A stretch of 64,000 bases of DNA from IMGVR_UViG_3300033182_000980:124001-188000, one strand, 5' to 3'. Positions 5,617-59,870 are shown, numbered from the stretch's first letter. Program-made: numbers and translations. Notes: generated by a model not told the origin, from the letters alone.

Positions 5617-5633
5617 TATAGATAAAGGGTTAC
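5617..5633 (-). promoter_or_regulatory. Motif A variant (GTAACCCTTTATCTATA)
   Basis: One mismatch to GTAACCCCTTATCTATA; upstream of ORF starting at 5591. Confidence 0.55.
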
Positions 5634-5637
5634 ACAC

Positions 5638-6912
5638 ATGATAGCTCGATATGCTTGTCCCCAGATTGAAAGTATCTTCAGCCCGATCCATCGTTTGAGG
5701 ATCTTTGTCGAAATCGAGAGACTTTTTTGTTCGAGTCAAGGATGTCCAGATTCAATCCTTGAGGATTTCTCGAAGGTAGACCTTGAACTGCTCCTTAAAG
5801 ATTTGGCTGTTAAGGAAAAAGAAACCCGACATGAGACGGTCGCTTTCATACAGGCTCTAGGGCTTCAGATGAGTAAGGAGTCCTTGCCTTATCTTCATAA
5901 GGGGGCAACCTCGTCTGACATCCTTGACACTTGTCTTGCAACACAGATGATGAACGCTTCTGATGTTGTCATTCAAAAGATTGAGTATCTTCTTGAAACG
6001 CTCAAGAAGAAGGCGATTGAATATAAAGACACTCCCATCTTAGGACGCTCTCATGGGATGTCGGGTGAGATCACGAGCTTTGGGGTTATCTTGCTTGGGT
6101 TTTATTCAGAGTGGACTCGAAACTTAGAACGCATGAAGAGAGCACAAGAAGAAATCTCTGTCGGGAAAGTATCTGGTGCTATGGGGAACTATGTTCATAT
6201 AGACCCTCAAATCGAGAAAACAATATGCAAGGCTCTAGGGCTTGATTTTGAGCCTGTTTCGACTCAAGTAATACCAAGAGATAGACACGCATACTTTATG
6301 AGCGTATTGGGCATTTTAGGGGCATCTATGGAACGCTTATCCATAGAGGTGAGAAACTTATCACAGTCTCTCATACAAGAAGTGGCAGAAGGGTTCGGTA
6401 AAGATCAAACAGGATCATCAGCTATGCCCCATAAAAGAAATCCAATCCTGTCCGAGAACCTAACTGGACTAGCTCGTATGATCCGATCTTATGTTCAGCC
6501 TAGCCTTGAGAATGTATCTCTTTGGTATGAACGAGATATGAGTCATTCATCTGTAGAGCGTATTGCCATAGAGGACTCCCTACATCTCGTTTGCTTTGGT
6601 CTAAGCAGACTTAATGGGGTTATCAAGAACCTTTATGTAGACGCAGACAGGATGGCTCATAATATAGACCAAGTTAAAGGGTCTTATTTGAGTCAGACTT
6701 GTCTCTTGTTCCTCATGGACAAGGGGTACGCTAGAGATGATGCGTATAAGGTAGTCCAAGAGATGACCCTTTATGGTCAGAAAGATCTCCTTGATGTTTT
6801 ACAAGGGGTCAAAGAGGCGGGTCATTTGACGCAAGAGGAGTTAGATCAGATCACTTCGAGAGATCGCTTTTTAGCTCGGACGAGCTTGATCTTCTCTAGG
6901 TTCGGTCTTTGA
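5638..6912 (+). CDS. purB: Adenylosuccinate lyase
   Basis: Fumarase-superfamily signature GSSAMPHKRNP, plus H.GATSSDI.DT, GRSHG and ERDMSHSSVER; full length at 424 aa. Confidence 0.95.
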   Translation: MIARYACPQIESIFSPIHRLRIFVEIERLFCSSQGCPDSILEDFSKVDLELLLKDLAVKEKETRHETVAFIQALGLQMSKESLPYLHKGATSSDILDTCLATQMMNASDVVIQKIEYLLETLKKKAIEYKDTPILGRSHGMSGEITSFGVILLGFYSEWTRNLERMKRAQEEISVGKVSGAMGNYVHIDPQIEKTICKALGLDFEPVSTQVIPRDRHAYFMSVLGILGASMERLSIEVRNLSQSLIQEVAEGFGKDQTGSSAMPHKRNPILSENLTGLARMIRSYVQPSLENVSLWYERDMSHSSVERIAIEDSLHLVCFGLSRLNGVIKNLYVDADRMAHNIDQVKGSYLSQTCLLFLMDKGYARDDAYKVVQEMTLYGQKDLLDVLQGVKEAGHLTQEELDQITSRDRFLARTSLIFSRFGL

Positions 6913-7006
6913 TCCACCCTCTTGGTCTGGCTTCTCTTCTTTTTTGGGTTTGTTCATGTGTTTGATTACTTCAAGACACCACATAAGGCATTTCCTTTCC
7001 GAAAGG

Positions 7007-7750
7007 TTATTTTCCCTTGCCCCCATTACGAGAGTCAAAGACCGAAGCCATAGCTGATCCTAATATACCTGTTAAGACCAATAAAACACGCTCAATCATA
7101 GCCAGAGAGTCTTTCGCTTCATTATTGCCTGTAATCCATGAGGTGATGATGAGCAAACCTAGCATGGTGACTAATCCCACTGTGCCATTGAACAACTGAC
7201 GCAATAGGGTGATCTGTCCAGTCAGCTTCTTCTCTTGTAGTAGGGCATACTCGGCTTTGGATTTATCTTCTTCAGCTTTCTTCTTCATCTCCTCAAGCTC
7301 AAGAAGCGTAGCCTTGTTCTCTTCAATGATCTGCTCAAGCTCGCTTTGTGTCTTTAACTCCTCTGATCTGTCTGCAAAGACAGCGACAAAGTATCTCTCC
7401 TCGCTGTTTTTTATGTCGGCCACATTCGCTTTAACAGGAACAACAGAACCATCTTTTTTGACTGCTTCGAGATTTCTCCAGTTACCCATGATGCCATGAC
7501 GCTTACCATTGGTCGCTCCCTTGTAGCTCTTAACATACCCCCTATGGTTATCCCCTATGTTAGAGGGCATAAGACTTCTAACATCTAAGCCGACCATCTC
7601 TTGATGTAGATAACCGAACATCATTGAAGCTGGTAGGTTAGCGTATCTAATAAATAGATCACCATTGCCCTCTTCTTGAGGATAATCACAAACGACAATA
7701 GCGATCTGTAAACGATCTCCCATCATCTCAAGTGTTTCGATAACTTTCAT
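7007..7750 (-). CDS. PAS-domain protein with coiled coil and two C-terminal TM helices
   Basis: MFGY...EMVG.DV..LMP...H.GY...KDGSVVPV...YFVAVF.D is a FixL-like PAS pattern; E/K-rich helix; two hydrophobic segments; RBS GGAG. Confidence 0.8.
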   Translation of the reverse strand: MKVIETLEMMGDRLQIAIVVCDYPQEEGNGDLFIRYANLPASMMFGYLHQEMVGLDVRSLMPSNIGDNHRGYVKSYKGATNGKRHGIMGNWRNLEAVKKDGSVVPVKANVADIKNSEERYFVAVFADRSEELKTQSELEQIIEENKATLLELEEMKKKAEEDKSKAEYALLQEKKLTGQITLLRQLFNGTVGLVTMLGLLIITSWITGNNEAKDSLAMIERVLLVLTGILGSAMASVFDSRNGGKGK

Positions 7751-7798
7751 TTGAAGCTCCCTTTGTTTTTTCTAACAAGGGGAGGCTTCATAAACGAG

Positions 7799-10210: not shown

Positions 10211-11488
10211 TCACCCTAAGAACCTTCCTACCTTAACAATCACTGACTCCTCATCCGAACGAATGTCTCCCTCCCAAATCACAAGGCAATCCAGCCCCAC
10301 CTCCGCATAAGCCTCTATCGTATTACGCTCATGCTCCTCTTTACTCATTCCTGTTAACGCTTGTGAGTGCCAATACCTACCAAAACACTCGACCACCTTT
10401 GTAGCACCCCTATAAGGATGTTCGGGATCATCACTCACACAAACTACAAAGTCTGGGTTCTTAAAGCCACCAATCGAACCGTCAAAGTTCTTCTTGCTTG
10501 GAAGAAATCTCCAATATGCCCCATTACCTGTAAAGGTGAGATTGTCGCTATATGAAGCTACCCTCGACTCAAACTTGTTCATCTCTTTCTGACTCATAAG
10601 CAAGATAGGGAACTCCACACCATACCTTGCTTTTAGAGTATCTTGAACCTTACCCCAATGTCCCTCAATAGCACCTGGAAACTCAACCCCATAACGATCC
10701 ATCATCGTAGCCCTAATCTCCCCCTTGCCTTGCTCGGACGCAAAGTAGTGGCTTCCATAGTTTTCAATCATCGTCTTGAGTTGTTTCTGCCTAAACTCCT
10801 CCACAGCACTCGTGTAAGGCACACCGTATCGCTCCATGTTAGTCGCTACAACCTTCTCCATGACTTCTTCACTCATGCTAGGGATCGGCACTCCATAACG
10901 CTCTATATTCGTTGCCTCAATCTTAGCCCTTAGCTCTGCTGACCCGAATAGCGTCCCACCATACCTCTCAAGATTAGTAGCCAATGTCTTAGCCTTGACC
11001 CCATCATTCTGTTGAGGGTTGACTACACCATATTTCTCAAGGTTCGTCTGCTTGATCTTATCCTGTACGCTCTCCCAAGCAAAAGGGTTATCCTTACCCT
11101 TTAAGATTGGACGCTTACCATCAAGAGCCTCTTGCACCTTTTCAAAGACACTACTCTCCTTTGAGAAAGGGTTCTCTGCACCATAACGCTTGAGGTTAGT
11201 CTGTTTACGCTTCTCCACAGACTCTTTGCTGTGGGCAGGATTCTCAACCCCATAACGATTTAACATAGTTTGTTTGCGTCTAAACTTTGAGATCGCTTTC
11301 TTATCTCGACTTTGCCATACCCCACATCCACTCTTATGTCTTTTCATCTGTGAGTTTGAGGTAGATTCATGTCCACAGATACATGGTGTGATTGGTTCGG
11401 GTTTCCAGTTAGGCCAGCACTTTGCCATGTGGCGGCTATTGATTCGATCCCCTTTGAACTCTCTTTTACAGTGAGGGCAAGTAGCCAT
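10211..11488 (-). CDS. Putative homing endonuclease (Zn fingers, YG repeats, Vsr/DUF559-like nuclease)
   Basis: N-terminal CPHC and C.CGH motifs; nine (R/K/N)YG repeats; C-terminal NPDFV...VVECFGRYWH...CLVIWE. Confidence 0.8.
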   Translation of the reverse strand: MATCPHCKREFKGDRINSRHMAKCWPNWKPEPITPCICGHESTSNSQMKRHKSGCGVWQSRDKKAISKFRRKQTMLNRYGVENPAHSKESVEKRKQTNLKRYGAENPFSKESSVFEKVQEALDGKRPILKGKDNPFAWESVQDKIKQTNLEKYGVVNPQQNDGVKAKTLATNLERYGGTLFGSAELRAKIEATNIERYGVPIPSMSEEVMEKVVATNMERYGVPYTSAVEEFRQKQLKTMIENYGSHYFASEQGKGEIRATMMDRYGVEFPGAIEGHWGKVQDTLKARYGVEFPILLMSQKEMNKFESRVASYSDNLTFTGNGAYWRFLPSKKNFDGSIGGFKNPDFVVCVSDDPEHPYRGATKVVECFGRYWHSQALTGMSKEEHERNTIEAYAEVGLDCLVIWEGDIRSDEESVIVKVGRFLG

Positions 11489-25671: not shown

Positions 25672-25688
25672 AATAAATAAGGGGTTAC
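25672..25688 (-). promoter_or_regulatory. Motif A variant (GTAACCCCTTATTTATT)
   Basis: Upstream of ORF 25648. Confidence 0.5.
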
Positions 25689-33530: not shown

Positions 33531-33542
33531 ATAAATAAACTA
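33531..33542 (-). promoter_or_regulatory. Motif B (TAGTTTATTTAT)
   Basis: Upstream of ORF 33495. Confidence 0.55.
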
Positions 33543-33555: not shown

Positions 33556-33572
33556 GTAACCCCTTATCTATA
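33556..33572 (+). promoter_or_regulatory. Motif A (GTAACCCCTTATCTATA), putative early promoter
   Basis: Exact copy; divergent from the motif B copy. Confidence 0.65.
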
Positions 33573-34053: not shown

Positions 34054-34134
34054 GAGCGAGGGGGGGGTGAAACCCGAACCTTATAATGAGGGGTTGATAT
34101 GACCCTCGACTAACATCTCTTGAAAGGAGAACCA

Positions 34135-34641: not shown

Positions 34642-34698
34642 ATGTAAGCCTTTGACAAGAAACATATAACCCCACCTGTCTCTTGAAAGGAGAACCCA

Positions 34699-35073: not shown

Positions 35074-35096
35074 AGTCTCTTGAAAGGAGAACTGTA

Positions 35097-35909: not shown

Positions 35910-35926
35910 GTAACCCCTTATCTATA
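35910..35926 (+). promoter_or_regulatory. Motif A
   Basis: Exact copy. Confidence 0.65.
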
Positions 35927-35963
35927 GGTTCATATAAGCCAATACTCTTGAAAGGAGAATGAC

Positions 35964-40909: not shown

Positions 40910-40921
40910 TAGTTTATTTAT
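40910..40921 (+). promoter_or_regulatory. Motif B (TAGTTTATTTAT)
   Basis: Upstream of ORF 40954 and the sheath gene. Confidence 0.55.
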
Positions 40922-47274: not shown

Positions 47275-47291
47275 TATAGATAAGGGGTTAC
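47275..47291 (-). promoter_or_regulatory. Motif A
   Basis: Exact copy, back-to-back with the copy at 47345. Confidence 0.65.
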
Positions 47292-47344: not shown

Positions 47345-47361
47345 GTAACCCCTTATCTATA
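47345..47361 (+). promoter_or_regulatory. Motif A
   Basis: Exact copy. Confidence 0.65.
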
Positions 47362-47402
47362 GTGATTGTGTAGCCCGATCAACTCTTGAAAGGAGAACAA
47401 CA

Positions 47403-47587: not shown

Positions 47588-47604
47588 GTAACCCCTAATC
47601 TATA
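47588..47604 (+). promoter_or_regulatory. Motif A variant (GTAACCCCTAATCTATA)
   Basis: One mismatch; upstream of the ligase gene. Confidence 0.55.
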
Positions 47605-50171: not shown

Positions 50172-50173
50172 TT

Positions 50174-50275
50174 TGCTTGATTGGTATTCAACCTCTTATT
50201 GGAGAGTCATCTCTAATAGGGTTGGTGCTTCTTTAAGAGGTTCAAACTCTGGTTCGATTCCAGATCAAGCAACCA
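50174..50275 (+). ncRNA. tRNA-like RNA with encoded CCA and non-canonical core
   Basis: Acceptor TGCTTGA/TCAAGCA plus ACCA; T-arm TCTGG-TTCGATT-CCAGA; 67-nt interior with a long hairpin. Confidence 0.6.
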
Positions 50276-50599: not shown

Positions 50600-50872
50600 A
50601 TGTCTAAGAGAGTAGAAGATCTAAGAATTCTTGTGAACAAGAAAATGAAGCTCGATAAATACTTGAGTATCTGTGAGGGGCTTCATTATGTTTGTTTTTT
50701 CATGCTCATCTTCTATGTAGTCACATTCAAGAATGGAGACACACCTTATTTGATTTCTTGGGCGTTTCTTGCACTTATTGGTTGGGTAGCTACAACGATA
50801 CTTGAGAAGAAGATAGTCCAAGTGAAACTAGAAATGACATCAGAGTTGTTTGAAAGTAAATCGCAAGAGTAG
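50600..50872 (+). CDS. Small two-TM membrane protein
   Basis: Two hydrophobic segments; start reassigned to 50600. Confidence 0.55.
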   Translation: MSKRVEDLRILVNKKMKLDKYLSICEGLHYVCFFMLIFYVVTFKNGDTPYLISWAFLALIGWVATTILEKKIVQVKLEMTSELFESKSQE

Positions 50873-50935
50873 CTCAGTCGGTAGAGCGTCAGCCTTCCAA
50901 GCTGAATGTCGCGGGTTCGAGACCCGTCTCTTGCT
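50863..50935 (+). tRNA. tRNA-Gly(TCC)
   Basis: Cloverleaf; TCAGC-CTTCCAA-GCTGA. Confidence 0.95.
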
Positions 50936-51005
50936 TTGACCCCAAGTTCATTTCCTTTTTCGATTTGAGCGTTGACCTTTGGGTTATGGTCTTGGGGTTT
51001 CTTTT

Positions 51006-51079
51006 GCTCACTTAGCTCAGTTGGTTAGAGCAACGGACTGTTAATCCGTGGGTCCAAGGTTCAAATCCTTGAGTGAGCG
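51006..51079 (+). tRNA. tRNA-Asn(GTT)
   Basis: Cloverleaf; ACGGA-CTGTTAA-TCCGT. Confidence 0.95.
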
Positions 51080-51187
51080 TACCTCCTTTGGTTGGTGGTT
51101 AAGAGCAACCATGATCCCTCATGTAAATGGGTTGTGCAAAGATAGCTTCTAGGTTGTTGGTCGCTTCTTTGTTTAGGGATCGCTTAT

Positions 51188-51259
51188 GTACCTGTAGCTC
51201 AACGAACAGAGCCTCATCGTTGTAGATGAGAGGTCTAGGTGTAAGTCCTAGTGGGTACA
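51188..51259 (+). pseudogene. Degenerate tRNA-Thr-like element
   Basis: All stems pair, but the anticodon loop is 8 nt (CGTTGTAG), the T-loop is TGTAAGT and the D-loop lacks GG. Confidence 0.6.
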
Positions 51260-51659
51260 AGTTGGAGTTAAGTAAGTGTCTGCTGTCGGGGGTTCGTTAA
51301 CATTTCCCTTCCGACAGAAGTCTCCCCATTACTAAGCTAGTCGAAACCCACCACATGGGGTGGCGTAAATGACATATTACTTAACTTGAGTAGTGATACT
51401 CTACATATACCAGCAAATGGTATATGTAGAATCCTACCCTTACAGGAGAAATCCTGTAAGCAGTTATACTAATGAAAATGTTAGCATTGGGCTTTACGCT
51501 GATGGTGGTATGCACTTGGAGGGTCTAAGCCTACCCTACCCTGAGACTCATTCAACCCTTATTCGTTTAAGGGGAGTGTACTCATAGTAGAAATGACTAG
51601 AACTGGTCTAGGATTTCCCTAGACCTTACTACTATGGGTAGATTAGGTCTACCCGCTTT

Positions 51660-51742
51660 GGACAGGTGGCCGAGTGGTTAAAGGCATCAGACTGTAAATC
51701 TGACCTCGTGAGAGTACGCAGGTTCAAATCCTGCCCTGTCCA
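51660..51742 (+). tRNA. tRNA-Tyr(GTA)
   Basis: Class II cloverleaf; TCAGA-CTGTAAA-TCTGA. Confidence 0.95.
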
Positions 51743-51762
51743 CTATCAAGGAGTTTCAACAC

Positions 51763-52023
51763 ATGAGTACAAAAGCTACCATCGCACATGGTGATGATTT
51801 CCATGTCTACCAGGAGATGTTTGAGGGTGATGCAGTCTACCTCCAAATAGATAAGCATGGTGGGTTCGTTCAGATCATTGGCGATAGAGTCACTATAAGC
51901 CTACCTCCAGAGCTTTTAGACAAGATCGCAAGGGGTTGGCTAGAGAACCGAGAAAAGTTCGATACAGAGCCAAATACAGAGCTTAATCTTGAGGGGTTGA
52001 AGAAGCTACGATCAGAGTCGTAA
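51763..52023 (+). CDS. Hypothetical protein
   Basis: RBS AAGGAG. Confidence 0.65.
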   Translation: MSTKATIAHGDDFHVYQEMFEGDAVYLQIDKHGGFVQIIGDRVTISLPPELLDKIARGWLENREKFDTEPNTELNLEGLKKLRSES

Positions 52024-52036
52024 CCCCTTATTTATA
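52020..52036 (+). promoter_or_regulatory. Motif A variant (GTAACCCCTTATTTATA)
   Basis: One mismatch. Confidence 0.55.
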
Positions 52037-52148
52037 GCCTAGTGTATCAACAACCACTAGGAGCAAGAATGAGCTTTGTAATCATGTCCGTCATCTTCGC
52101 TATGGTGTTCGCACCAGCGTTTGATTTACACCTCTACTTGAACAAGGT

Positions 52149-52165
52149 GTAACCCCTTATCTATA
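52149..52165 (+). promoter_or_regulatory. Motif A
   Basis: Exact copy. Confidence 0.65.
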
Positions 52166-52188
52166 TCACTTCGTAAAGGAGAACAAAA

Positions 52189-52398
52189 ATGCCATACGAC
52201 TTAAACTACAACCACTTCAACTATGTCCGGTCTTTTGAGCGTGAGATCAAGTCTCACCTTGAGAACCCCGACCTCCCCTTCCTTGCTCGGCAGTTTGCCA
52301 TGATGGGCTGTGGGAGAAACTACCTCGATGGGACTCTCGTCTGGCCCCATGAGAGCCTTGATCGGTCCATCATCTCCTCAAAGAGTATAAGCTCTTAG
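52189..52398 (+). CDS. Hypothetical protein
   Basis: Motif A plus AAAGGAG RBS. Confidence 0.65.
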   Translation: MPYDLNYNHFNYVRSFEREIKSHLENPDLPFLARQFAMMGCGRNYLDGTLVWPHESLDRSIISSKSISS

Positions 52399-52597
52399 AC
52401 ACGCTTCGAGGCTTCTTCGAGTATGACTGTCGGTTGTCCGAGGAGAGCGATCTCAAGGTGCTTAGTAAGGGGGCTGATGAGGACATCGTGGCTTTCCTTG
52501 TGGAGAACCCCGATCCACGCTACTTCACACTCCCCGACTAAAAAAACTTGCAAGGTAGCCTTTAGATCATATAAAAGACTCACCCCACCACACTTAC

Positions 52598-52669
52598 GGT
52601 CCATTCGTCTAGTGGTAAGGACTCCGGCCTTTCACGCCGGCAACACGGGTTCAAATCCCGTATGGATCA
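52598..52669 (+). tRNA. tRNA-Glu(TTC)
   Basis: Cloverleaf; CCGGC-CTTTCAC-GCCGG. Confidence 0.95.
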
Positions 52670-52756
52670 TTAGGTGGGTTAAGCCAAGCAGATAGGGTAG
52701 TTTGAATACCTATACTGACTGGCCCCTAATGCGTTTAACCCTTATGTGAGTCCATT

Positions 52757-52972
52757 ATGAAAAAAGTTAAGTTCACCAAGAAAGACGGCAAGAAATCGTA
52801 CATTGAGGTCGATCAGTCTTTGCTCAAGAATAAGATCATTTCCCTGTATGCTGATAACAAGCCCTATTCATTGCAGAGCTTTCTAAGCAATCCCATGTCC
52901 TTTTCAGTAGAGCGTGTTAACTATCAGAGGTTCAACTATTCGGACGGGAGTTTTGAATACAAGGAGATGTGA
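52757..52972 (+). CDS. Hypothetical protein
   Basis: Coupled small-ORF run. Confidence 0.55.
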   Translation: MKKVKFTKKDGKKSYIEVDQSLLKNKIISLYADNKPYSLQSFLSNPMSFSVERVNYQRFNYSDGSFEYKEM

Positions 52973-53190
52973 TGTTTAAAGACAAGTGGGTTGAAAAGAG
53001 GGATAAAGCTCGTGCGTATAAGGTCTTGTCTTTGAACCACCTCACCGACAAGGTGGCAGACCCTGTAGATAAAGCTAAACTTAAAGAGCTGATCTCAGTT
53101 TATTTAGATGCCCATGACTTTACGACTAGGGTAGGTTTAGAGATCGCTAAGTATGAAGATAAATACTCTGTTAAAAAGGAGAAAGAATGA
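52969..53190 (+). CDS. Hypothetical protein
   Basis: RBS AAGGAG; overlaps the upstream stop. Confidence 0.6.
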   Translation: MMFKDKWVEKRDKARAYKVLSLNHLTDKVADPVDKAKLKELISVYLDAHDFTTRVGLEIAKYEDKYSVKKEKE

Positions 53191-53320
53191 TGTTTGGAGA
53201 CAGAACGATTTACTGTCCTCGATGTAAGCGAGAGACTTGGGACGGAGCTTCTTGTCCAGCGACCAACAGGACTAAAAAGTGTCAAGACTCCGAGGTTGAA
53301 AAGACTCGGAAGCCTAAGAC

Positions 53321-53554
53321 ATGAAGTGGTGGTACTTTCAGAGGGTGGGCGAGAAACTGAAACTTGCACCTTTAGATTTCTTTACATATCGCCCCTCTGA
53401 TGCTACCCCTTCGGATAACCCTATGACCCCTTGGTATGACCTCTACAATCACATTGATGAGGTTCATGTTCATGTGCAAGCAGAAACCTACGAAATCGCC
53501 TTAGCTTTAGCCTACCTCATGGTTAAGGAAAAAGAGGCTTCAATCGAGGTATAA
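53321..53554 (+). CDS. Hypothetical protein
   Basis: ATGA overlap with an unlisted 45-aa CxxC ORF at 53187-53324. Confidence 0.55.
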   Translation: MKWWYFQRVGEKLKLAPLDFFTYRPSDATPSDNPMTPWYDLYNHIDEVHVHVQAETYEIALALAYLMVKEKEASIEV

Positions 53555-53585
53555 AGAGACTCCCAATCATATAAGAGTGGCATGA

Positions 53586-53658
53586 GGGCTGTTAGCTCAA
53601 TCGGTAGAGCACCGGACTTTTAATCCGTTGGTTCTGGGTTCGAGTCCCAGACGGCCCA
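53586..53658 (+). tRNA. tRNA-Lys(TTT)
   Basis: Cloverleaf; CCGGA-CTTTTAA-TCCGT. Confidence 0.93.
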
Positions 53659-53680
53659 TTATTTAAACACTCTTGTATGA

Positions 53681-54013
53681 TTGGAGATGTCAGTGATCTA
53701 TGACAAGACTAAACTAGATGGGCATTGGTATTGCTCTACCCAGTTTCAAAAGGTGGGGGAGTTTGTGTTCTCCCTCCTCCATAATGACTTTGACCCCGAA
53801 GAAGCAGGTCGGGTGATCTATTGGGCGATTTGTAATCTTGCCGATACTGGATATGTGCGAAAGGGTATGTTGACCACCCTTGATGGGATGCTCGCAGACG
53901 AGGGCATATCTGTTGAAGATAAAAGGTATGCTCGGCTCGTAAGGGGGTATGTGGACAACTATGACTTTGGTTTGGAGCGTACCCCTAAGAACTGGCATAG
54001 GAGTACAAAATGA
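53681..54013 (+). CDS. Hypothetical protein
   Basis: ORF track; ATG at 53687 has a GGAG RBS. Confidence 0.6.
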   Translation: MEMSVIYDKTKLDGHWYCSTQFQKVGEFVFSLLHNDFDPEEAGRVIYWAICNLADTGYVRKGMLTTLDGMLADEGISVEDKRYARLVRGYVDNYDFGLERTPKNWHRSTK

Positions 54014-54585
54014 GTGATAAATCTGATCTTAAAATGCTGGTCAAGGTGGTGAACACCTTACAAGAGGAATCCGACAATCGTTTCATCAAGGGCATGATTA
54101 CTCGGATACAGGGATTGATTGAGACAATGGAGCAAGACCTTAACCTCAAGGTTGAGACTACAGACACCTATGCTCGTAAGGAATACTTTAAGGACTATGT
54201 GGTCAACAGATATAGCCCTATCATCAACCAAGAGGTTTATGCCTATGAGTTTGTGCGTGGGAAGATCCGAAAGAAGTTTCCAATCGTATTGAAAGAAATC
54301 ACTAAGGAGATCATTAGGGTGAGTCGTGATGGCTACCTTGCTTCCGAGCTACCTCAACACAGCTCTTATTGGAGGGATTGTCATTGTGTAGCTGGAGAAG
54401 ATCCTTATGAGAACCTTGATAACTGTCGTGCTCATTATTGGCGTGAATATCGTACAGATAAAGACCCAGTAGAGTGGTGGAGTAAAGAGCCATTCTTAGG
54501 TCGTAAGGTTCGAGTATGGAAGAAAGATTTAGCTCTGCCAGAGCCTTCATTAAGTGAAAAAATGCAGTCAGTTAAGAAGGCATAA
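54010..54585 (+). CDS. Hypothetical protein
   Basis: ATGA overlap; RBS AGGAG. Confidence 0.65.
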   Translation: MSDKSDLKMLVKVVNTLQEESDNRFIKGMITRIQGLIETMEQDLNLKVETTDTYARKEYFKDYVVNRYSPIINQEVYAYEFVRGKIRKKFPIVLKEITKEIIRVSRDGYLASELPQHSSYWRDCHCVAGEDPYENLDNCRAHYWREYRTDKDPVEWWSKEPFLGRKVRVWKKDLALPEPSLSEKMQSVKKA

Positions 54586-54799
54586 TCATATAATAGATAT
54601 GTGTTCTTAACGAGTGTCATAAGGAGTTGAATATGACCCTACAACTATTTGTAACCTTCGCTATCTGCTTCATGTCTGGTGGCATACACTTTTCAAACTA
54701 CAAGCTGTCGAGATCAACTTGGACCTGGTATGTGATTGCAGTCCTGTTCTCAATCCCAGCTTTTACTAAAGTCATCACAATGGCTCAAGGATAAGAATA

Positions 54800-55105
54800 A
54801 TGAGCGAGAAAAAAGTCTATACGATAAGAAGAAAATATGGTTGGGATGTCTATTCTTACTATGAGGGTTGGAAAGAGATTGAGCTAACCGAGGAGCAAAT
54901 CGCAGAGGTTCGTGCTAACCCAGACTTGCTTGATGATGATGAATGGTTAAATAAAGCCTTTGATTGGGTGGATATGGATGAGGAGGAGCTGGTCACAGAC
55001 TCTTGGTGTAAGGGTAGTGTTGACCAAATGCCCCTAGAGACTGAGTTTGATTTCTACATTGAGGATCTTACAGGAGAAGAGGATGAGTCGGAAGATCAAG
55101 GTTAA
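54800..55105 (+). CDS. Acidic hypothetical protein (paralog A)
   Basis: KY.W....YEG.KEI...LV.D.WCKG is shared with the next ORF. Confidence 0.7.
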   Translation: MSEKKVYTIRRKYGWDVYSYYEGWKEIELTEEQIAEVRANPDLLDDDEWLNKAFDWVDMDEEELVTDSWCKGSVDQMPLETEFDFYIEDLTGEEDESEDQG

Positions 55106-55398
55106 ATACGAGTGGACAATCTGGGCTCACTACGAAGGGTATAAAGAGATTGATGTTGATGAACACCCAGAGCTTTTAGAGAAGATCAAAGACAACTTTG
55201 AATCTGTCGAGGACTTACAAACTGACATGAATACATGGGACTATGTATGTGAGGATATTTGTGAGATCGAAGGTGAACATCTTGTATCTGATGAGTGGTG
55301 TAAGGGTGGGGGTTAATCAGATGCCATTCAAGATTGAACTGACAAACATTGAGTTTGATGAACTGTTGCATCCAGAGGAGGATGAAGAAGATGAGTAA
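55083..55398 (+). pseudogene. Acidic paralog B, frameshifted at a G5 run
   Basis: Stops at 55316; removing one G at 55308-55312 restores ...WCKGGVNQMPFKIE...EEDE, collinear with paralog A. Confidence 0.65.
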
Positions 55399-55573
55399 TG
55401 AAGTAAACCTATACGCTATCTTGTCGGATAAGGGAGAGGTGATTAAGACCTCACATGGATTGTACTACTTTACGAGGTCAAAGGCTCGTGAAGCTCGGAA
55501 AGAGGTTGAGGGTAAGGCTCGCATTGTGAAGCGTTCTTATAATGCCAACAGCACATGGGTGACAGCAAAATGA
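55391..55573 (+). CDS. Hypothetical protein
   Basis: MSNEVNLY start overlapping the upstream stop. Confidence 0.55.
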   Translation: MSNEVNLYAILSDKGEVIKTSHGLYYFTRSKAREARKEVEGKARIVKRSYNANSTWVTAK

Positions 55574-55797
55574 GAGCACTTGAGCGACAACATCTAGGTC
55601 AGCTTTTCATTTACTGCATCAACAATGATGTACCTAAAGAAGAAATCGGTGCAATCATGTGGTGGGTGTGTGAGAACAACTTGTTCTTAAAGAGAGACAT
55701 TCAGAGCAAGCTCTCCAAAGAGCCTTTGAAAGACCACCCTTATGCCTTGATTGTGCGTGAAGCAGAAGATTGCAACGCATTTGGTATAAGAGGGTAG
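55570..55797 (+). CDS. Hypothetical protein
   Basis: ATGA overlap. Confidence 0.55.
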   Translation: MRALERQHLGQLFIYCINNDVPKEEIGAIMWWVCENNLFLKRDIQSKLSKEPLKDHPYALIVREAEDCNAFGIRG

Positions 55798-55840
55798 TAG
55801 ACAAGCCACATTGTCTTGTATAGTGTGGCATTCAAGCGAT

Positions 55841-55922
55841 GCCTAGATGGTGGAATCGGTATACACAGGAGACTTAAAATCTCCCGACTTCGGTCTTGTG
55901 GGTTCGAGTCCCACTCTAGGTA
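55841..55922 (+). tRNA. tRNA-Leu(TAA)
   Basis: Class II cloverleaf; GGAGA-CTTAAAA-TCTCC. Confidence 0.95.
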
Positions 55923-55927
55923 TTTAA

Positions 55928-56000
55928 GGGCCTGTAGCTCAGTGGTCAGAGCGACCGTCTCATAAACGGTTGGTCATGGGTTCAATCCCCATCGGGCCCA
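55928..56000 (+). tRNA. tRNA with CAT anticodon (elongator Met or Ile2)
   Basis: ACCGT-CTCATAA-ACGGT; G1:C72 is paired, so not an initiator. Confidence 0.9.
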
Positions 56001-56059
56001 CTATTTATCTACTCGCTAAATGCTAATCATATAAAGGTGGGTGTAAAAAAAACTACAAG

Positions 56060-58074: not shown

Positions 58075-58309
58075 AGAGTTTGAGGCTGTACAATACATAG
58101 GTGATAACGCGGATGAGGTGATCACCTTTATCGGCCTTGAAGCTAAGGTCAATGACAACTGCATTACAGTCATTGACCCTACAGGGGAATGGTCAGTTTT
58201 CGTTGACCAATGGGTCTTGAGAACCCTCGACCAAGAAATCTTAGGTACTGTGGATAAAGATCACTTTTGGGAGAGCTTCGCTACAGTAGATGAGCCTTTA
58301 GAAGATTAG
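58052..58309 (+). CDS. Hypothetical protein
   Basis: EAVQY.GDN..EV..F pattern common in phage small proteins. Confidence 0.6.
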   Translation: MEITRQLEEFEAVQYIGDNADEVITFIGLEAKVNDNCITVIDPTGEWSVFVDQWVLRTLDQEILGTVDKDHFWESFATVDEPLED

Positions 58310-59088
58310 TAAGTCTTGCTAGAAAGGTTCATTAAAGCTCTCTCTCTGTTAAGTCGATCAAGTCTATTATCGAGCTTCTTGATCTCTTTTTTTAGAGCGT
58401 TCAGTCCAAGATCCTTCCATCTTGAATACTCACCCTCATCTGGTTCGAAGATTTCGATCTCCTCATAGAGTTTGGAGTATTGATCGTATGCTTTATCAAA
58501 CTCCCTCTCGGCATAAGAGTCCATTTCTCTCATCTTGTGATACTCTTCGGGATCTTCCCACTCGGTTCTACCGTAGTCTCGGCTTTCAAGGTAAGACATA
58601 TCAAGATCCTCTTCTCGGAGATCCTTTTTCAAAGCACGATCATTAAAGTGATTGAACCCTCGTGGGTTTAAGTGCTTCTTTAAGAGGTCGATCTTTGTGT
58701 CCGACTTATCACCTACGATGAACCTTTCAACTTGAGGTCGTCTACCCGACATATCTACAAGAGCGAAAGCGTTATTGATGTAGCTACCTCCTGGAGACTC
58801 GTACATATCGGGAGCTTCGACCTCATATGTAGCACCTACACCAAAGACAACCACATATCCTTGCCCCTGTGAAACAGCGACAATTTGAGGGTCTATTAAG
58901 TCCTCAAATGGTTTTGGTGCGAAGTGCTCCATCTCATCCATTTCCGACATTTTAAAGTGATCTAGCAAGCGATCAAGTCCAAGAACTTGAAGTTGCTTGA
59001 GTTCGCTTCGCTTGTACACATGGTCATAAAATGACTCAAGAGCACTGATGATTTGTTTTACGGTTTTACGGTTGATGTTCATATTCAT
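58306..59088 (-). CDS. Hypothetical protein with C-terminal coiled coil
   Basis: RBS AAGGAG. Confidence 0.7.
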   Translation of the reverse strand: MNMNINRKTVKQIISALESFYDHVYKRSELKQLQVLGLDRLLDHFKMSEMDEMEHFAPKPFEDLIDPQIVAVSQGQGYVVVFGVGATYEVEAPDMYESPGGSYINNAFALVDMSGRRPQVERFIVGDKSDTKIDLLKKHLNPRGFNHFNDRALKKDLREEDLDMSYLESRDYGRTEWEDPEEYHKMREMDSYAEREFDKAYDQYSKLYEEIEIFEPDEGEYSRWKDLGLNALKKEIKKLDNRLDRLNRERALMNLSSKTY

Positions 59089-59094
59089 CTCCTT

Positions 59095-59814
59095 TTAGAT
59101 TCGGTACTGCAAACGCAAAGCGTTGTAGGTTCGTTGTTCTTGTTTTGAGGGTGCAATACCATCACGAGCTTTTAGACCTAAGTCTTTGATTGTTTCCATG
59201 TCATCACGATTGCCCTCAGATCGTGCCTTGCGATAGAGATCACGCAACTTCTCTACATCGAGTGCGTTTGAGGTTGTAGAGGTAGATCGAGTACGATTAG
59301 CTTTGACAGCCTCAAGGATATAACGCTCTTGGTTAGCCCATAGAACGCTTCCACCTTCAAGGGCATCTCGGCTTTTGATGATCTCCCTATCAGAACCACC
59401 GTTCGGGAGAGAGTCGATCATGCCGAGCCACTTGGCTTTATATCCAGCTCGGTCAGCGATCTTCTCATAAAACTCGTCTTTGTCCTCATAGATTGAGATC
59501 CAATGATCGACACCTTTCTTCCAAGTCACTTTCCAGTTCTTGGTGCGTTGGAAGTATTTGCGATCACGAGCCTTACGGTTCAACAAAGACCCATCCACAC
59601 GAGAGACAAGACTAAGGTTCATTGAAGCATTACCTTTAGATACTGAACCACCTGTATCTTTTTGTGTTGATGAGAGCTTCACAGCTACACGATCTGACAG
59701 GTGGATTAGATATACACCTGCTCTGCCTGCAACTCGACTCCATGAGCCGAAGCTAGATGAGAGCCAACCTTCAAGGTCTTGTCTGCTGATATTTACATAG
59801 TCTTGCCGAGCCAT
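59095..59814 (-). CDS. Hypothetical protein
   Basis: RBS AGGAG; both motif A and a motif-B variant upstream. Confidence 0.7.
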   Translation of the reverse strand: MARQDYVNISRQDLEGWLSSSFGSWSRVAGRAGVYLIHLSDRVAVKLSSTQKDTGGSVSKGNASMNLSLVSRVDGSLLNRKARDRKYFQRTKNWKVTWKKGVDHWISIYEDKDEFYEKIADRAGYKAKWLGMIDSLPNGGSDREIIKSRDALEGGSVLWANQERYILEAVKANRTRSTSTTSNALDVEKLRDLYRKARSEGNRDDMETIKDLGLKARDGIAPSKQEQRTYNALRLQYRI

Positions 59815-59853
59815 ACTCTGTTCTCCTAAGTTTATTCGTTGGTGGGACTAGTC

Positions 59854-59870
59854 TATAGATAAGGGGTTAC
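59854..59870 (-). promoter_or_regulatory. Motif A
   Basis: Exact copy. Confidence 0.65.

What the first reader, a model, noticed from the sequence alone, without database searches (positions are those of the whole stretch)
5617..59870. Motif A (GTAACCCCTTATCTATA, 10 copies) with a conserved CTCTTGAAAGGAGAA leader: phage-specific promoter class
Seen: exact copies at 33556, 35910, 47275(-), 47345, 52149 and 59854(-); variants at 5617(-), 25672(-), 47588 and 52020. All are intergenic and oriented toward small accessory or replication genes. CTCTT(G)AAAGGAGAA precedes several starts in 33590-35960 and 47380-47640. The motif is longer and more conserved than a sigma70 promoter. Inference: an early promoter read by a phage RNA polymerase or dedicated factor, or a regulator binding site.
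Basis: partly seen in the sequence, partly recalled or inferred. Interest (0 to 1): 0.6.

Follow-up and report, generated by a model that had tools for sequence, protein, structure and literature searches.

The report
Jumbo-phage promoter class with repeated cassettes
A 17-base motif repeated 67 times in an uncultured 376-kb marine phage is very probably one of three phage-specific promoter types, most likely read by the host RNA polymerase carrying a sigma factor that the phage encodes, and its copies also mark the points where gene cassettes have been swapped between related phages.

Summary
GTAACCCCTTATCTATA occurs 10 times in the window (0.11 expected) and 67 times in the 375,691-bp phage genome. 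It almost always lies 17-87 nt before a co-oriented SD+ATG (61/67, against 14/67 on the other side). Related phages (~84% nucleotide identity) keep positions 1-11 at 92-100% while flanks drift to 50-80%.

It behaves as a promoter. Six back-to-back divergent pairs, one only 8 nt apart, leave no room for another. Short leaders and 5' hairpins put the start about 6-8 nt after the motif.

It is one of three classes. Class C (TTAATAGTTTNTTTATA, ~63 copies, before structural operons) shares the frame TAA-NNNN-TTATYTATA and differs mainly in a central CCCC versus TAGT.

No phage RNA polymerase was found (T7-type search negative, with a positive control). The phage does encode an ECF-type sigma (201 aa, outside the window), a tandem sigma-4 protein and a NusG-like protein.

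The "leader" is real and class-A-specific: 62% of class A genes carry an anti-SD/SD pairing, against 5-7% of other genes.

Motif copies also sit at cassette swaps, an inversion and indels between relatives, like T4 PeSL cassettes.

The parts
5617..5633 (-). Motif A copy (GTAACCCTTTATCTATA, 1 mismatch). Short leader: ATG of the 116-aa gene 5241-5591(-) lies 25 nt downstream.
25672..25688 (-). Motif A copy (GTAACCCCTTATTTATT, 2 mismatches, C-type 3' half). Short leader: ATG of the 188-aa gene 25082-25648(-) lies 23 nt downstream.
33556..33572 (+). Exact Motif A heading the operon 33608-35906 (75, 81, 168, 124 and 269 aa). It is divergent from a class C promoter at 33531-33542(-).
35910..35926 (+). 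Exact Motif A starting 4 nt after the stop of the previous gene. It drives the 135-aa gene 35964-36371 (phrog_2650, unknown function) and the genes after it.
47275..47291 (-). Exact Motif A, left member of a back-to-back divergent pair (53-nt gap). It has a 63-nt leader with a GTGAGG/CCTCAC hairpin and drives the 154-aa gene 46747-47211(-).
47345..47361 (+). Exact Motif A, right member of the divergent pair. It drives the 57-aa gene 47403-47576.
47588..47604 (+). Motif A variant (GTAACCCCTAATCTATA) driving the ATP-dependent DNA ligase gene 47646-48593 (315 aa).
52020..52036 (+). Motif A variant (C-type 3' half TTATTTATA) before a 27-codon hydrophobic ORF (52069-52152). That ORF's TAA stop is bases 2-4 of the next motif copy.
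   Evidence: and direct reading of the sequence
52149..52165 (+). Exact Motif A with a short leader (ATG 23 nt downstream; gene 52189-52398, 69 aa), followed by tRNA-Glu. It lies inside the + strand tRNA cluster.
59854..59870 (-). Exact Motif A driving the 239-aa gene 59095-59814(-). A class C-like box (TAATAACTTATTTATA, 59882-59897) sits 15 nt upstream, making tandem promoters.
34117..34131 (+). Leader CTCTTGAAAGGAGAA (anti-SD CTCTT paired with SD AGGAG) before an internal gene of the class A operon.
34680..34694 (+). Leader CTCTTGAAAGGAGAA before the internal gene 34699-35073.
35077..35091 (+). Leader CTCTTGAAAGGAGAA before the internal gene 35097-35906.
35945..35959 (+). Leader CTCTTGAAAGGAGAA, 18 nt after the Motif A copy at 35910.
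47383..47397 (+). Leader CTCTTGAAAGGAGAA, 21 nt after the Motif A copy at 47345.
33531..33542 (-). Class C promoter core (TAGTTTATTTAT), the sister class of Motif A. It heads the minus-strand operon 33495-27139 (483, 474, 188, 100 and 846 aa).
40910..40921 (+). Class C promoter core heading the 143-aa gene and the 1619-aa tail-sheath-like gene (41391-46250).

Best explanation
Motif A is the recognition core of a phage-specific promoter class. The 17-mer sits immediately upstream of the transcription start, at roughly -24 to -8. Its near-invariant 5' half (tGTAACCCCTTA) abuts a -10-like 3' half (TCTATA). About 5 unconstrained bases follow, and then a constrained start region (GTRT, with Y24-R25). 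Many transcripts then begin with a GC-rich 5' hairpin, a C/A-rich linker and an SD (AAAGGAGAA) that can pair with an upstream CTCC/CTCTT. The class drives small accessory ORFs, a DNA ligase and part of the tRNA cluster, so it looks early or middle. A sister class (C, TTAATAGTTTNTTTATA) uses the same frame with TAGT in place of CCCC and drives structural operons. The enzyme is most likely the host RNA polymerase, redirected by a phage protein. The best candidate is the phage's own two-domain ECF-type sigma factor (201 aa, genome 218172-218777, outside the window), possibly with helpers (tandem sigma-4 protein, NusG-like protein). The precedent is phiEco32, where the sigma gp36 and its helper gp79 read a -10-proximal consensus. 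SHOWN: the copy number, orientation, position, conservation, shared frame and class-specific leader, and the presence and fold of the sigma. INFERRED: that transcription starts there, the exact start site, the timing, and which protein reads the motif.
For: Abundance: 10 copies in the window against 0.11 expected and 67 in the genome against 0 for the reversed control. Orientation: 61/67 sites have SD+start+ORF within 100 nt downstream against 14/67 on the other side, and 12 of those 14 belong to six divergent pairs with gaps of 8-66 nt. Nothing upstream of position 0 is conserved within the genome or between genomes. Footprint against relative G001 (84% identity): positions 1-11 at 92-100%, 13-17 at 84-92%, 18-22 at 52-72% (the minimum) and 23-30 at 80-96%. 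Start-site constraints: at seven sites the ATG is only 22-25 nt after the motif and the SD begins about 11 nt after it. Leader hairpins with different stem sequences begin at positions 23-30. Position 24 is a pyrimidine in 91% of copies and position 25 a purine in 85%. Shared frame: TAA-NNNN-TTNTNTAT occurs 77 times against 1-6 in shuffles, with the central 4-mer almost only CCCC-type (48) or TAGT-type (~24). Class C heads a baseplate wedge operon, the tail-lysozyme-like gene and the sheath neighbour. Sigma70-type consensus promoters are not enriched in the A-dense 20 kb (11 against 17.7 +/- 4.0). Sigma: the profile of its homologs hits a solved sigma-H at E=4.7e-9 across sigma2-sigma4. The AF2 model (pLDDT 78.8) matches ECF sigmas first, with probability up to 1.0, and phiEco32 gp36 at rank 41. 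JGI names homologs 'sigma24 family'. Its C-terminal HTH varies between clades, as expected for a reader of a lineage-specific motif. The sigma gene is preceded by TTGACA in this genome and in two diverged relatives, which fits early transcription by host sigma70 RNAP. Precedent: PMC12276001.
Against: There is no transcript evidence at all: no RNA run holds this phage. ECF sigmas normally need a -35 and a -10 element 16-17 bp apart, and a contiguous 17-mer ending about 7 nt before the start is not their usual architecture. The link between the sigma and class A, rather than class C or B, is not shown. Class C-like boxes seem to persist in more diverged relatives that keep the sigma, so the sigma might read class C instead. 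Near-invariance over 11-17 bases is more typical of single-subunit phage RNAP promoters than of sigma-dependent ones. Several giant orphan proteins (up to 3049 aa) remain uncharacterised.
Confidence: 0.55

Rival explanations
1. The same reader, but a classical ECF-type bipartite promoter. GTAAC (positions 1-5) would be the -35 element, GTRT (positions 23-26) the -10 element 17 bp away, and the start would lie at about position 32-34. The conserved CCCTTATCTATA would then be an unusually constrained spacer or a second factor's site.
For: The phage sigma is ECF-type. ECF promoters typically carry an 'AAC' -35 and a 'CGT/GT' -10 about 16-17 bp apart (established knowledge of sigmaE, sigmaW, sigmaX and Mtb sigmaH). 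Motif A reads tGTAAC-N17-(A/C)GT(G/A)T, and positions 23-26 are conserved between genomes.
Against: At the sites with leaders of 22-25 nt a start at position 32-34 would fall on or after a perfect SD. Leader hairpins that begin at positions 23-30 would be cut. In the six A/B hybrids (GTAACCCCTTA[A/T]TCATATAA) the downstream box moves +2 together with the TATA, not with GTAAC. Positions 23-26 are only 50-75% conserved within the genome, while the supposed spacer is 97-100% conserved.
Confidence: 0.13
2. A so far unrecognised phage RNA polymerase reads the motif as a compact T7-like promoter (-17 to -1, ending in CTATA) and starts at or just after position 18. It could be single-subunit, or carried in the virion within one of the giant orphan proteins.
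For: The motif is 17 nt and near-invariant, ends in CTATA as T7 promoters do, and has a TAACCC core as in T3 (established consensus sequences). Nothing upstream is needed: one divergent pair is only 8 nt apart. Giant orphan ORFs of 1.9-3.0 kaa have no assigned function.
Against: PF00940 finds nothing in this genome, in relatives G001 and G002, or in LR745208.1 even at E<=1-10, while T7 scores 1e-109 in the same search. There are no multisubunit RNAP domains, no DxDGD or D[FYW]DxD triad and no T7 motif B. The giants have no PDB or PHROG hit and the atlas gives no hit. Position 18 is not conserved (A21, G23, T17, C6), and positions 18-22 are the least conserved stretch, unlike the +1 to +6 region of T7-type promoters.
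Confidence: 0.12
3. Host sigma70 holoenzyme reads a weak core, and the 5' half GTAACCCCTTA is the binding site of a phage activator (a MotA/AsiA-like 'sigma appropriation' or class II activator). Candidates are the tandem sigma-4 protein or one of the multi-HTH proteins.
For: Class B (TCATATAA) and the A/B hybrids suggest a shared AT-rich core to which an upstream element is added. The phage encodes a tandem sigma-4 protein in an operon with a clamp loader and a NusG-like protein, and several multi-HTH proteins.
Against: The core lacks the key sigma70 -10 features: no A at -11 with T at -7 in any register. Both recognition helices of the tandem sigma-4 protein are invariant down to 49% identity, whereas Motif A is absent from the diverged contigs examined (sigma 37-57% identical). 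Sigma70-type promoters are not enriched.
Confidence: 0.12
4. It is not a promoter. The motif would be an RNA-level signal in 5' UTRs (a processing or translational-control site), an operator, or purely a recombination repeat.
For: The motif travels with a class-specific leader, with anti-SD/SD pairing in 62% of class A genes. Copies lie at rearrangement junctions. In 11/67 copies an upstream GGGG can pair with the motif's CCCC, making a terminator-like hairpin followed by TTATCTAT.
Against: In six divergent pairs the motif is the only conserved element between the two gene starts, with gaps as short as 8 nt, so any promoter would have to be the motif itself. The motif is asymmetric and strictly oriented. 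The sequence upstream of it is the least conserved in the region. A recombination role does not exclude promoter function, and T4 PeSLs have both.
Confidence: 0.08

Closest known systems
phiEco32 middle/late promoters read by the phage sigma gp36 with its helper gp79 (PMC12276001)
   Same: A phage-encoded two-domain (sigma2 + sigma4-like) sigma directs host RNAP to phage-specific promoters whose conserved sequence lies next to the -10 region and which have no -35 consensus. The core sequences resemble each other (AATGTA there, TATCTA at positions 10-15 here; my alignment). The phiEco32 register, with the consensus centred at -11.5, would place +1 at about position 24 here. gp36 appears among the structural matches of the sigma found here (rank 41).
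   Different: The consensus here is 17 nt rather than 6 and far more invariant. It comes in two or three classes that share a frame. No gp79-like helper was identified. Reading by the sigma is not shown here.
T4 late promoters (TATAAATA at about -13 to -6, read by gp55 with gp33 and the gp45 clamp) and T4 middle promoters (MotA box plus AsiA)
   Same: Host RNAP is reprogrammed by phage factors, with temporal classes defined by short AT-rich -10-proximal boxes (established T4 biology; PMC2988021 lists the classes). Class B (TCATATAA) and the 3' half of A and C (TTATYTATA) resemble the T4 late box in composition and position. A clamp-loader gene sits in the operon with the tandem sigma-4 protein.
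   Different: The sigma here has both sigma2 and sigma4 domains, whereas gp55 is sigma2-like only. The upstream element abuts the -10-like box instead of lying at -30. No MotA, AsiA, gp33 or gp55 homologs were identified, and they were not specifically searched for.
PeSL cassettes (promoter-early stem-loop) of T4-type phages (PMC2839356, PMC4122927)
   Same: A repeated intergenic unit of promoter, GC-rich stem-loop and SD lies in front of small ORFan genes, concentrated in a hyperplastic region (here 334-363 kb). Copies lie at the junctions of indels, swaps and an inversion between close relatives.
   Different: PeSL promoters are strong sigma70 consensus promoters with an AT-rich upstream region, and their stem-loops act as terminators. 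Here the promoter is not sigma70-like and most hairpins lie downstream in the leader without a T-run. Mini-circles and recombination were shown experimentally for PeSLs; here they are only inferred from two genomes.
T7/T3/SP6-type single-subunit RNAP promoters
   Same: A contiguous, highly conserved element of about 17 nt that ends in (C)TATA just before the transcribed region, needs no upstream sequence and occurs in many copies per genome.
   Different: No T7-like RNAP gene is present. Position +1 of that register is not conserved, and a 5-nt unconstrained gap follows the motif.

Membership tests
Phage-specific promoter class (functional category) | Over-represented motif confined to intergenic DNA and co-oriented with downstream genes | tested here: met
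   67 copies against 0 for the reversed control. 61/67 have SD+start+ORF downstream against 14/67 on the other side.
Phage-specific promoter class (functional category) | Purifying selection on the motif relative to its flanks in related genomes | tested here: met
   Positions 1-11 are 92-100% conserved while flanks are 50-84%, in a relative at 84% identity and in 62 site-relative pairs (that set carries some ascertainment bias).
Phage-specific promoter class (functional category) | RNA 5' ends map just downstream of the motif | not testable with these tools
   No RNA run holds this phage. Only DNA metagenomes hold it, with 5-10% of the sampled words.
Sigma70-type (housekeeping) promoter | -35 TTGACA-like and -10 TATAAT-like hexamers 16-18 bp apart, with A at -11 and T at -7 | tested here: not met
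   No register of the 17-mer gives A-11 with T-7. The only TAnnnT box (positions 21-26) is weakly conserved and lies too close to the SD at short-leader sites. Consensus sigma70 promoters are not enriched.
T7-like single-subunit RNAP promoter | A cognate T7-family RNAP encoded by the phage | tested here: not met
   PF00940 gives no match at E<=10 in this genome, while T7 scores 1e-109 in the same search. Relatives are also negative.
T7-like single-subunit RNAP promoter | Conservation continuous through +1 to about +6, with a conserved initiating purine | tested here: not met
   Position 18 reads A21, C6, G23, T17, and positions 18-22 are the least conserved stretch.
ECF sigma-dependent promoter | A cognate ECF-type sigma (sigma2 + sigma4) is available | tested here: met
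   The 201-aa protein's profile hits a sigma-H structure at E=4.7e-9, and its fold matches ECF sigmas with probability up to 1.0.
ECF sigma-dependent promoter | -35 'AAC' and -10 'CGT/GT' elements 16-17 bp apart, with the start about 6-8 nt after the -10 | tested here: inconclusive
   GTAAC-N17-GTRT can be read in the motif. However, short leaders, leader hairpins and the +2 shift in the hybrids argue that the start lies before that '-10' could serve.
PeSL-type mobile regulatory cassette | A repeated promoter + stem-loop + SD unit flanking ORFans in hyperplastic regions | tested here: met
   36/67 sites have a leader hairpin of <= -6 kcal/mol, with stems of differing sequence. 31 of the 67 copies lie at 334-363 kb, before small ORFs.
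PeSL-type mobile regulatory cassette | Copies coincide with recombination junctions between related genomes | tested here: met
   19 HSP ends lie within 40 nt of a copy against 5.6 +/- 2.4 (maximum 15 of 500 random sets). A cassette swap, an inversion between inverted copies and an insertion at a copy were found. Caveat: local alignments tend to end at conserved islands.
PeSL-type mobile regulatory cassette | The promoter is a strong sigma70 consensus early promoter, and the stem-loop is a terminator | tested here: not met
   The motif is not sigma70-like, and most hairpins lie in the leader without a T-run. Only 11/67 copies have an upstream GGGG that can pair with the motif's CCCC.

The most novel reading that the evidence does not exclude
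One ECF-type phage sigma reads a common extended -10-like core (TTATYTATA). The temporal programme of this huge-phage lineage would then be set by a binary 4-base discriminator just upstream: CCCC for accessory/early cassettes and TAGT for structural/late operons. A second phage factor, such as the tandem sigma-4 protein, would read or gate that discriminator. The same promoter cassettes would serve as the homologous-recombination points that shuffle accessory genes between relatives. That would be a contiguous, -35-independent promoter architecture for a two-domain sigma, and a PeSL-like system built on a phage-specific rather than a host-type promoter.
Probability: 0.22. Interest if true: 0.65.

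Novelty: new variant of a known kind. Interest (0 to 1): 0.45.

Why it matters
Huge phages known only from metagenomes have almost no experimentally grounded gene regulation. Here the sequence alone yields a testable regulatory map. It gives three promoter classes with about 160 sites, a predicted start site, a class-specific leader design, and named candidate factors (an ECF-type sigma, a tandem sigma-4 protein and a NusG-like protein), all of which can be expressed and tested in vitro without culturing the phage. If the CCCC/TAGT discriminator model holds, it would show how a single compact sigma system can encode a temporal switch. It would also provide orthogonal promoter/sigma pairs of very high specificity. 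The cassette rearrangements at motif copies extend the PeSL idea of promoters doubling as recombination modules beyond T4-like phages. Even on the conservative reading, the motif is a practical marker. It classifies accessory against structural genes and delimits operons in this clade, and a more distant relative (LR745208.1) has its own equivalent motif.

Tried and rejected
- Nucleotide search of window 33-48 kb against GenBank phages found no match. The nearest record by Pol A protein is the unannotated huge phage LR745208.1, at 45% identity.
- Pfam searches of the genome for T7-type RNAP, multisubunit RNAP domains and Sigma70_r2 were all negative.
- Motif scans for DxDGD, D[FYW]DxD, DxDxD and T7 motif B gave nothing plausible.
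- PHROGs, PDB sequence search and the ESM-atlas look-alike search on the giant orphan proteins (3049, 2368, 2176, 2060 and 1902 aa) gave nothing. They remain unassigned, which is not evidence that they lack polymerase activity.
- Public RNA data: none. The 24 listed runs are DNA metagenomes holding 5-10% of the sampled words; it could not show RNA starts.
- An exact 17-mer next to a T7-like RNAP domain on contig L057 looked exciting. It lies inside the RNAP ORF, encodes GNPLSIQGE, and recurs in the homologous gene of L060. Together with L032 and L049, these are taken as unrelated matches: none shares similarity with this genome, and about 10 random exact 17-mer hits are expected in a collection of that size (my estimate).
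- 'TAGTGT' as a sigma70 -10 box was rejected, because at short-leader sites the start would fall on or after the SD.
- Over-represented 9-mers in three contigs with diverged sigma homologs (TTATTTCTGA, TCTATTTTT) turned out to be mostly coding and unrelated to gene starts. Those 18-21 kb pieces are too short to define their promoters.
- Literature search for the motif string found only unrelated primers.
- Complex prediction was not used, since I do not claim that the sigma and the tandem sigma-4 protein bind each other.
- One script was killed without output and was rerun in leaner form.

Full report
**Setting.** The window is bases 124001-188000 of a 375,691-bp IMG/VR virus record (GC 44.9%; CheckV completeness 100%; ends classed linear). 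It is an uncultured marine or aquatic jumbo phage. Only DNA metagenomes labelled marine, seawater, aquatic, estuary and the like hold parts of it. It has no nucleotide match among GenBank phages. Its nearest record by Pol A protein is the unannotated 485-kb 'uncultured phage' LR745208.1, at 45% identity. Recognisable genes include:
- an intein-containing large terminase and ribonucleotide reductase, Pol A, a UvrD-like helicase and a CCA/poly(A) polymerase;
- a 1619-aa tail-sheath-like protein, a lysozyme/hub-like protein and a homing endonuclease in the window;
- nine tRNA genes at window 49376-56001.

**1. The observation.** There are six exact copies of GTAACCCCTTATCTATA and four variants, 10 matches at <=3 mismatches against 0.11 expected. 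The leader CTCTTGAAAGGAGAA is exact at five places. The whole genome holds 60 copies at <=2 mismatches, with 0 for the reversed-pattern control, and 67 at <=3 mismatches. The 5' half GTAACCCCTTA practically never occurs without the 3' half: 67 of its 71 near-matches are motif sites. Without relying on my gene calls, 61 of 67 copies are followed within 100 nt by an SD, a start codon and an open frame of at least 25 codons (median distance 42 nt, range 17-87). On the opposite side only 14 of 67 are, and 12 of those belong to six back-to-back divergent pairs.

**2. Anatomy.** A position table over the 67 sites shows the following:
- T at position 0 in 66% of copies;
- positions 1-11 (GTAACCCCTTA) at 97-100%;
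- positions 12-17 (T/C/T/A/T/A) at 66-100%, with position 13 reading C in 46 copies and T in 19;
- positions 18-20 barely constrained;
- a weaker box at positions 21-26 (T-A-G-T-R-T), with position 24 a pyrimidine in 91% and position 25 a purine in 85%.

Nothing upstream of position 0 is conserved. Copies fall into two kinds. Short-leader copies have the ATG 22-31 nt after the motif. Long-leader copies (50-66 nt) carry a GC-rich hairpin that begins at positions 23-30; 36 of 67 sites fold to <= -6 kcal/mol. The stems differ in sequence from copy to copy (GTGAGG/CCTCAC, GGGGCT/AGCCCC, CGTGGGTGGT/ACCACCCACG and others), which supports a real structure. After the hairpin come a C/A-rich linker (…ACCACTCACTCC…) and the SD AAAGGAGAA.

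**3. Conservation in relatives.** The exact 17-mer occurs in 55 stretches of IMG/VR contigs. Of these, 51 are homologous to this genome, mostly at 73-90% nucleotide identity and six at 97% or more. A 227-kb relative (G001) has 44 copies at <=3 mismatches and a 109-kb relative has 14. Across 62 site-relative pairs, positions 1-11 are 95-100% conserved against about 78% background, and the 15 nt just upstream are only 50-75% conserved. Those loci were chosen for holding an exact copy somewhere, which biases the result upward. I therefore repeated the footprint with the whole of G001 as the only comparator (84% mean identity, 25 sites spanned). Positions 1-11 are 92-100% conserved, positions 13-17 are 84-92%, positions 18-22 are 52-72% (the minimum of the whole profile), and positions 23-30 are 80-96%. 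The four non-homologous exact matches are taken as chance or unrelated. In two of them the 17-mer lies inside a T7-like RNAP ORF and encodes GNPLSIQGE.

**4. Why it is a promoter and where transcription should start (inference).**
- (a) In six divergent pairs the two copies point away from each other, with gaps of 8, 52, 52, 53, 64 and 66 nt. The motif is the only conserved element between the two gene starts, so it must itself be the promoter, and nothing upstream of it can be required.
- (b) At the short-leader sites a perfect SD begins about 11 nt after the motif. A start more than about 10 nt downstream would lose it.
- (c) The leader hairpins begin at positions 23-30. If they are RNA 5' hairpins, the start lies at or before about positions 23-25.
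- (d) Between genomes there is an unconstrained gap at positions 18-22, followed by a constrained block from position 23. That is the pattern of a -10 element, a discriminator and a start region. It is not the pattern of T7-type promoters, which are conserved continuously through +1 to +6.
- (e) Y24-R25 is a typical -1/+1 pair.

I therefore place the 17-mer at about -24 to -8, with the start at positions 23-25. This remains unverified, because no RNA run holds the phage.

**5. Motif A is one of three classes.** K-mer enrichment in upstream regions with Motif A masked, followed by a look at the contexts, revealed two more classes.
- **Class C** is TT(a/t)aTAGTTT(A/C/G)TTTATa, with 63 co-oriented intergenic copies 27-57 nt before ATGs.
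- **Class B** is aaTCATATAA, with 29 exact copies outside Motif A, 18-56 nt before ATGs. It precedes Pol A, the terminase and others.

Aligned at their 3' ends, A reads G-TAA-CCCC-TTAT-C-TATA and C reads T-TAA-TAGT-TTAT-T-TATA. The frame TAA-NNNN-TTNTNTAT occurs 77 times against 1-6 in Markov shuffles, and its central tetranucleotide is almost only CCCC/CCCT (48) or TAGT-like (about 24). Six A/B hybrids (GTAACCCCTTA[A/T]TCATATAA) exist, and in them the downstream box shifts by +2 together with the TATA. Classes B and C leave footprints in G001 as well.

Class C heads a baseplate-wedge operon with two giant genes, the lysozyme/hub-like gene, the gene before the sheath-like giant, and giants of 2176 and 2084 aa. 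Class A heads small ORFs of unknown function, conserved phage proteins of unknown role and an ATP-dependent DNA ligase, and it lies within the tRNA cluster. Of its 67 copies, 31 are packed into 334-363 kb. Taken together, C looks late and structural and A looks early or middle and accessory. This timing is inferred from gene content only.

**6. The leader.** An anti-SD-like CTYY placed 2-7 nt before RGGAG is found in 34 of 55 class A first genes (62%). It is found in only 3 of 63 class C genes, 3 of 45 class B genes and 17 of 319 other genes. Of the 11 genomic copies of CTCTTGAAAGGAG, six follow a Motif A copy within 70 nt. Among the rest, the three in the window at 34117, 34680 and 35077 precede internal genes of the class A operon that starts at 33556. 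So the leader is a class-A-specific translation-initiation design, a small SD-sequestering hairpin. It is not part of the promoter, and its function (timing, stability, or a target for a nuclease or repressor) is unknown.

**7. Who reads it.** No phage RNA polymerase was found.
- PF00940 is negative in this genome, in G001, in G002 and in LR745208.1, while T7 scores 1e-109 in the same search.
- PF00562 and PF00623 are negative while all 14 control genomes ring.
- No catalytic DxDGD-type triad or T7 motif B was found.
- The giant orphan proteins give nothing in PHROGs, in PDB sequence search or in the atlas.
- Sigma70-type consensus promoters are not enriched in the A-dense 20 kb (11 against 17.7 +/- 4.0).

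The phage does encode transcription factors, all outside the window.
- (i) **A 201-aa sigma70-family protein** at genome 218172-218777(-). I found it through its LR745208.1 homolog. JGI names several homologs 'sigma24 family'. The alignment shows sigma2.1-2.3 and sigma4.2 signatures. The profile hits a solved sigma-H at E=4.7e-9. The AF2 model (pLDDT 78.8) matches ECF sigmas first (Mtb sigmaH/L/K, E. coli sigmaE, B. subtilis sigmaW) and phiEco32 gp36 at rank 41. It is single-copy and syntenic with thymidine kinase across relatives. It is preceded by TTGACA here and in two diverged relatives, which suggests early transcription by host sigma70 RNAP.
- (ii) **A 188-aa protein** at genome 42275-42841(-) with an N-terminal sigma-4-like HTH (PF04545, 26.0 bits against a 24.1 cutoff) and a second sigma-4-like HTH that I read from the sequence and from the two matches in its LR745208.1 homolog. 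It is conserved on huge marine contigs, with two paralogs in LR745208.1. Both putative recognition helices are invariant down to 49% identity.
- (iii) **A 174-aa NusG-like ORF** with only a weak KOW hit (19.3 bits, below the 22.3 cutoff), and a DnaX-like clamp loader, in the same operon.

The sigma's C-terminal HTH varies between clades, which fits a lineage-specific motif. The invariant tandem sigma-4 protein more likely binds something conserved. phiEco32 gives the precedent: host RNAP with the phage sigma gp36 and the helper gp79 reads a consensus AATGTA centred at -11.5 (PMC12276001). That register would put +1 here at about position 24.

**8. Wider context.** LR745208.1 lacks Motif A. It has about 50 copies of its own bipartite motif, CGATTTCACTAAAAAGT followed about 10 nt later by CGTGCCGATAGGGT, placed directly before an SD and ATG. 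It also has homologs of both the sigma and the tandem sigma-4 protein. Long, near-invariant, lineage-specific promoter motifs therefore seem to be a trait of this huge-phage group. Contigs whose sigma is 57%, 39% or 37% identical have no Motif A in 18-21 kb. They show some class-C-like boxes (TAGTT…TCTAT…) by eye, but they are too short to define motifs.

**9. Cassette behaviour.** The ends of homology blocks between this genome and G001 lie within 40 nt of a Motif A copy 19 times, against 5.6 +/- 2.4 for random intergenic positions (maximum 15 in 500 trials). Class C shows 16 against 5.4 +/- 2.4. Concrete cases:
- Two adjacent cassettes bounded by the copies at 349999 and 350384 are in swapped order in G001.
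- The segment 357189-357569, flanked by oppositely oriented copies, is inverted in G001.
- About 750 bp are inserted in G001 at the copy at 362507.
- About 2 kb holding two copies is replaced in G001.

This parallels the PeSL cassettes of T4-type phages, which combine a sigma70 early promoter, a GC stem-loop and an SD, flank ORFans, and recombine to shuffle modules (PMC2839356, PMC4122927). There are two differences: the promoter here is not host-type, and most hairpins lie in the leader without a T-run. In 11 of 67 copies an upstream GGGG can pair with the motif's CCCC, giving a terminator-like hairpin followed by TTATCTAT. One caveat applies: local alignments tend to end at conserved islands, so part of the enrichment may be technical.

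**10. Verdict.** Motif A is very probably (about 0.85) a phage-specific promoter. It is most likely read by host RNAP with a phage-encoded factor, and the ECF-type sigma is the best candidate (about 0.5). A cryptic phage RNAP, a classical ECF -35/-10 register, a host sigma70 plus activator scheme, and non-promoter roles remain as rivals. The finding is a new variant of a known kind: phage-specific promoter classes combined with PeSL-like cassettes. What stands out is the contiguous 17-nt architecture, the binary CCCC/TAGT discriminator shared with a sister class, and the class-specific leader.

Noticed in passing
window 49376-56001 (+): Nine tRNA genes (Arg-CCT, Arg-TCT, Gly-TCC, Asn-GTT, Tyr-GTA, Glu-TTC, Lys-TTT, Leu-TAA, Met-CAT) are interleaved with small ORFs and with the co-oriented Motif A copies at 52020 and 52149. 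My crude gene caller had placed a false ORF over tRNA-Glu.
   Followed up: partly
window 3873, 14555, 21240, 21896, 23743, 38782, 40910 (+); 3925, 18380, 33531, 57791, 59886, 61583 (-): Class C promoter-like motif TT(a/t)aTAGTTTNTTTATa, with 63 copies genome-wide. It shares the frame of Motif A but has TAGT in place of CCCC, heads structural operons, and often begins with the double stop TAATAG of the preceding gene.
   Followed up: yes
window 11522(-), 24518(+), 35930(+), 53567(+), 54586(+), 56027(+), 59936(+) and elsewhere: Class B box TCATATAA, 18-56 nt before ATGs (it precedes Pol A outside the window). It is often followed 2-4 nt later by a TAtGTG-like box. Six hybrids join the 5' half of Motif A to this box.
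   Followed up: partly
window 21303-21884, 21958-22773, 25082-25648 and many genome sites (e.g. genome 95435, 95923, 107342, 191203-191916): A multi-copy paralogous gene family whose products start MRR(S/T)AS(E)… Its upstream regions are conserved: a class C box, then TTAACCCTTAACC, then ATGGAGAA. One member (25082-25648) is driven by a Motif A variant instead.
   Followed up: no
window 52069-52152 (+): A 27-codon hydrophobic mini-ORF (MSFVIMSVIFAMVFAPAFDLHLYLNKV) lies between two Motif A copies. Its TAA stop is formed by bases 2-4 of the second copy.
   Followed up: no
genome 218172-218777 (-), locus L019:18172-18777: A phage-encoded ECF-type sigma factor (201 aa). It is syntenic with thymidine kinase in all relatives examined and is preceded by a TTGACA hexamer here and in two diverged relatives.
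   Followed up: yes
genome 42027-44655 (-), locus L011:2027-4655: An operon of a DnaX-like clamp loader (397-421 aa), a NusG-like protein (174 aa, weak KOW hit below the Pfam cutoff), a tandem sigma-4/sigma-4 protein (188 aa) and an 83-aa ORF, followed by a 2176-aa giant gene that has its own class C box. The operon is preceded by a class-B-like box ATAGTATAA-N3-TATGTGT.
   Followed up: partly
genome 334-363 kb compared with relative G001 (84.8-112.7 kb): Cassette swap (own 349991-350400 / 350383-351026), inversion (own 357189-357569), a ~750-bp insertion in G001 at own 362507, and replacement of own 359850-361840. All have their junctions at Motif A copies, which is PeSL-like modular shuffling.
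   Followed up: yes
LR745208.1 (loci L096-L120), e.g. 1629, 12971, 15318: This distant 485-kb relative (GC 55%) has about 50 copies of its own bipartite promoter-like motif, CGATTTCACTAAAAAGT followed about 10 nt later by CGTGCCGATAGGGT, placed immediately before an SD and ATG. It has no Motif A.
   Followed up: partly
L057:826-842 and L060:1338-1354: The exact 17-mer occurs inside T7-like RNAP ORFs of two unrelated small viral contigs, where it encodes GNPLSIQGE. This is a coding match in homologous genes, not a promoter.
   Followed up: yes
genome 3255-6062 (-) and 86441-89101 (+); window 10211-11488 (-): Inteins with LAGLIDADG domains lie in the large terminase and in the ribonucleotide reductase large subunit. 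A free-standing homing endonuclease gene lies in the window.
   Followed up: no
genome 349991-350006, 350378-350391 and other copies (L026:9991-10006, 10378-10391): In 11 of 67 copies an upstream GGGG(TT) can pair with the motif's (AA)CCCC. The resulting hairpin, followed by TTATCTAT, scores as terminator-like, so it may be a composite terminator-promoter.
   Followed up: partly
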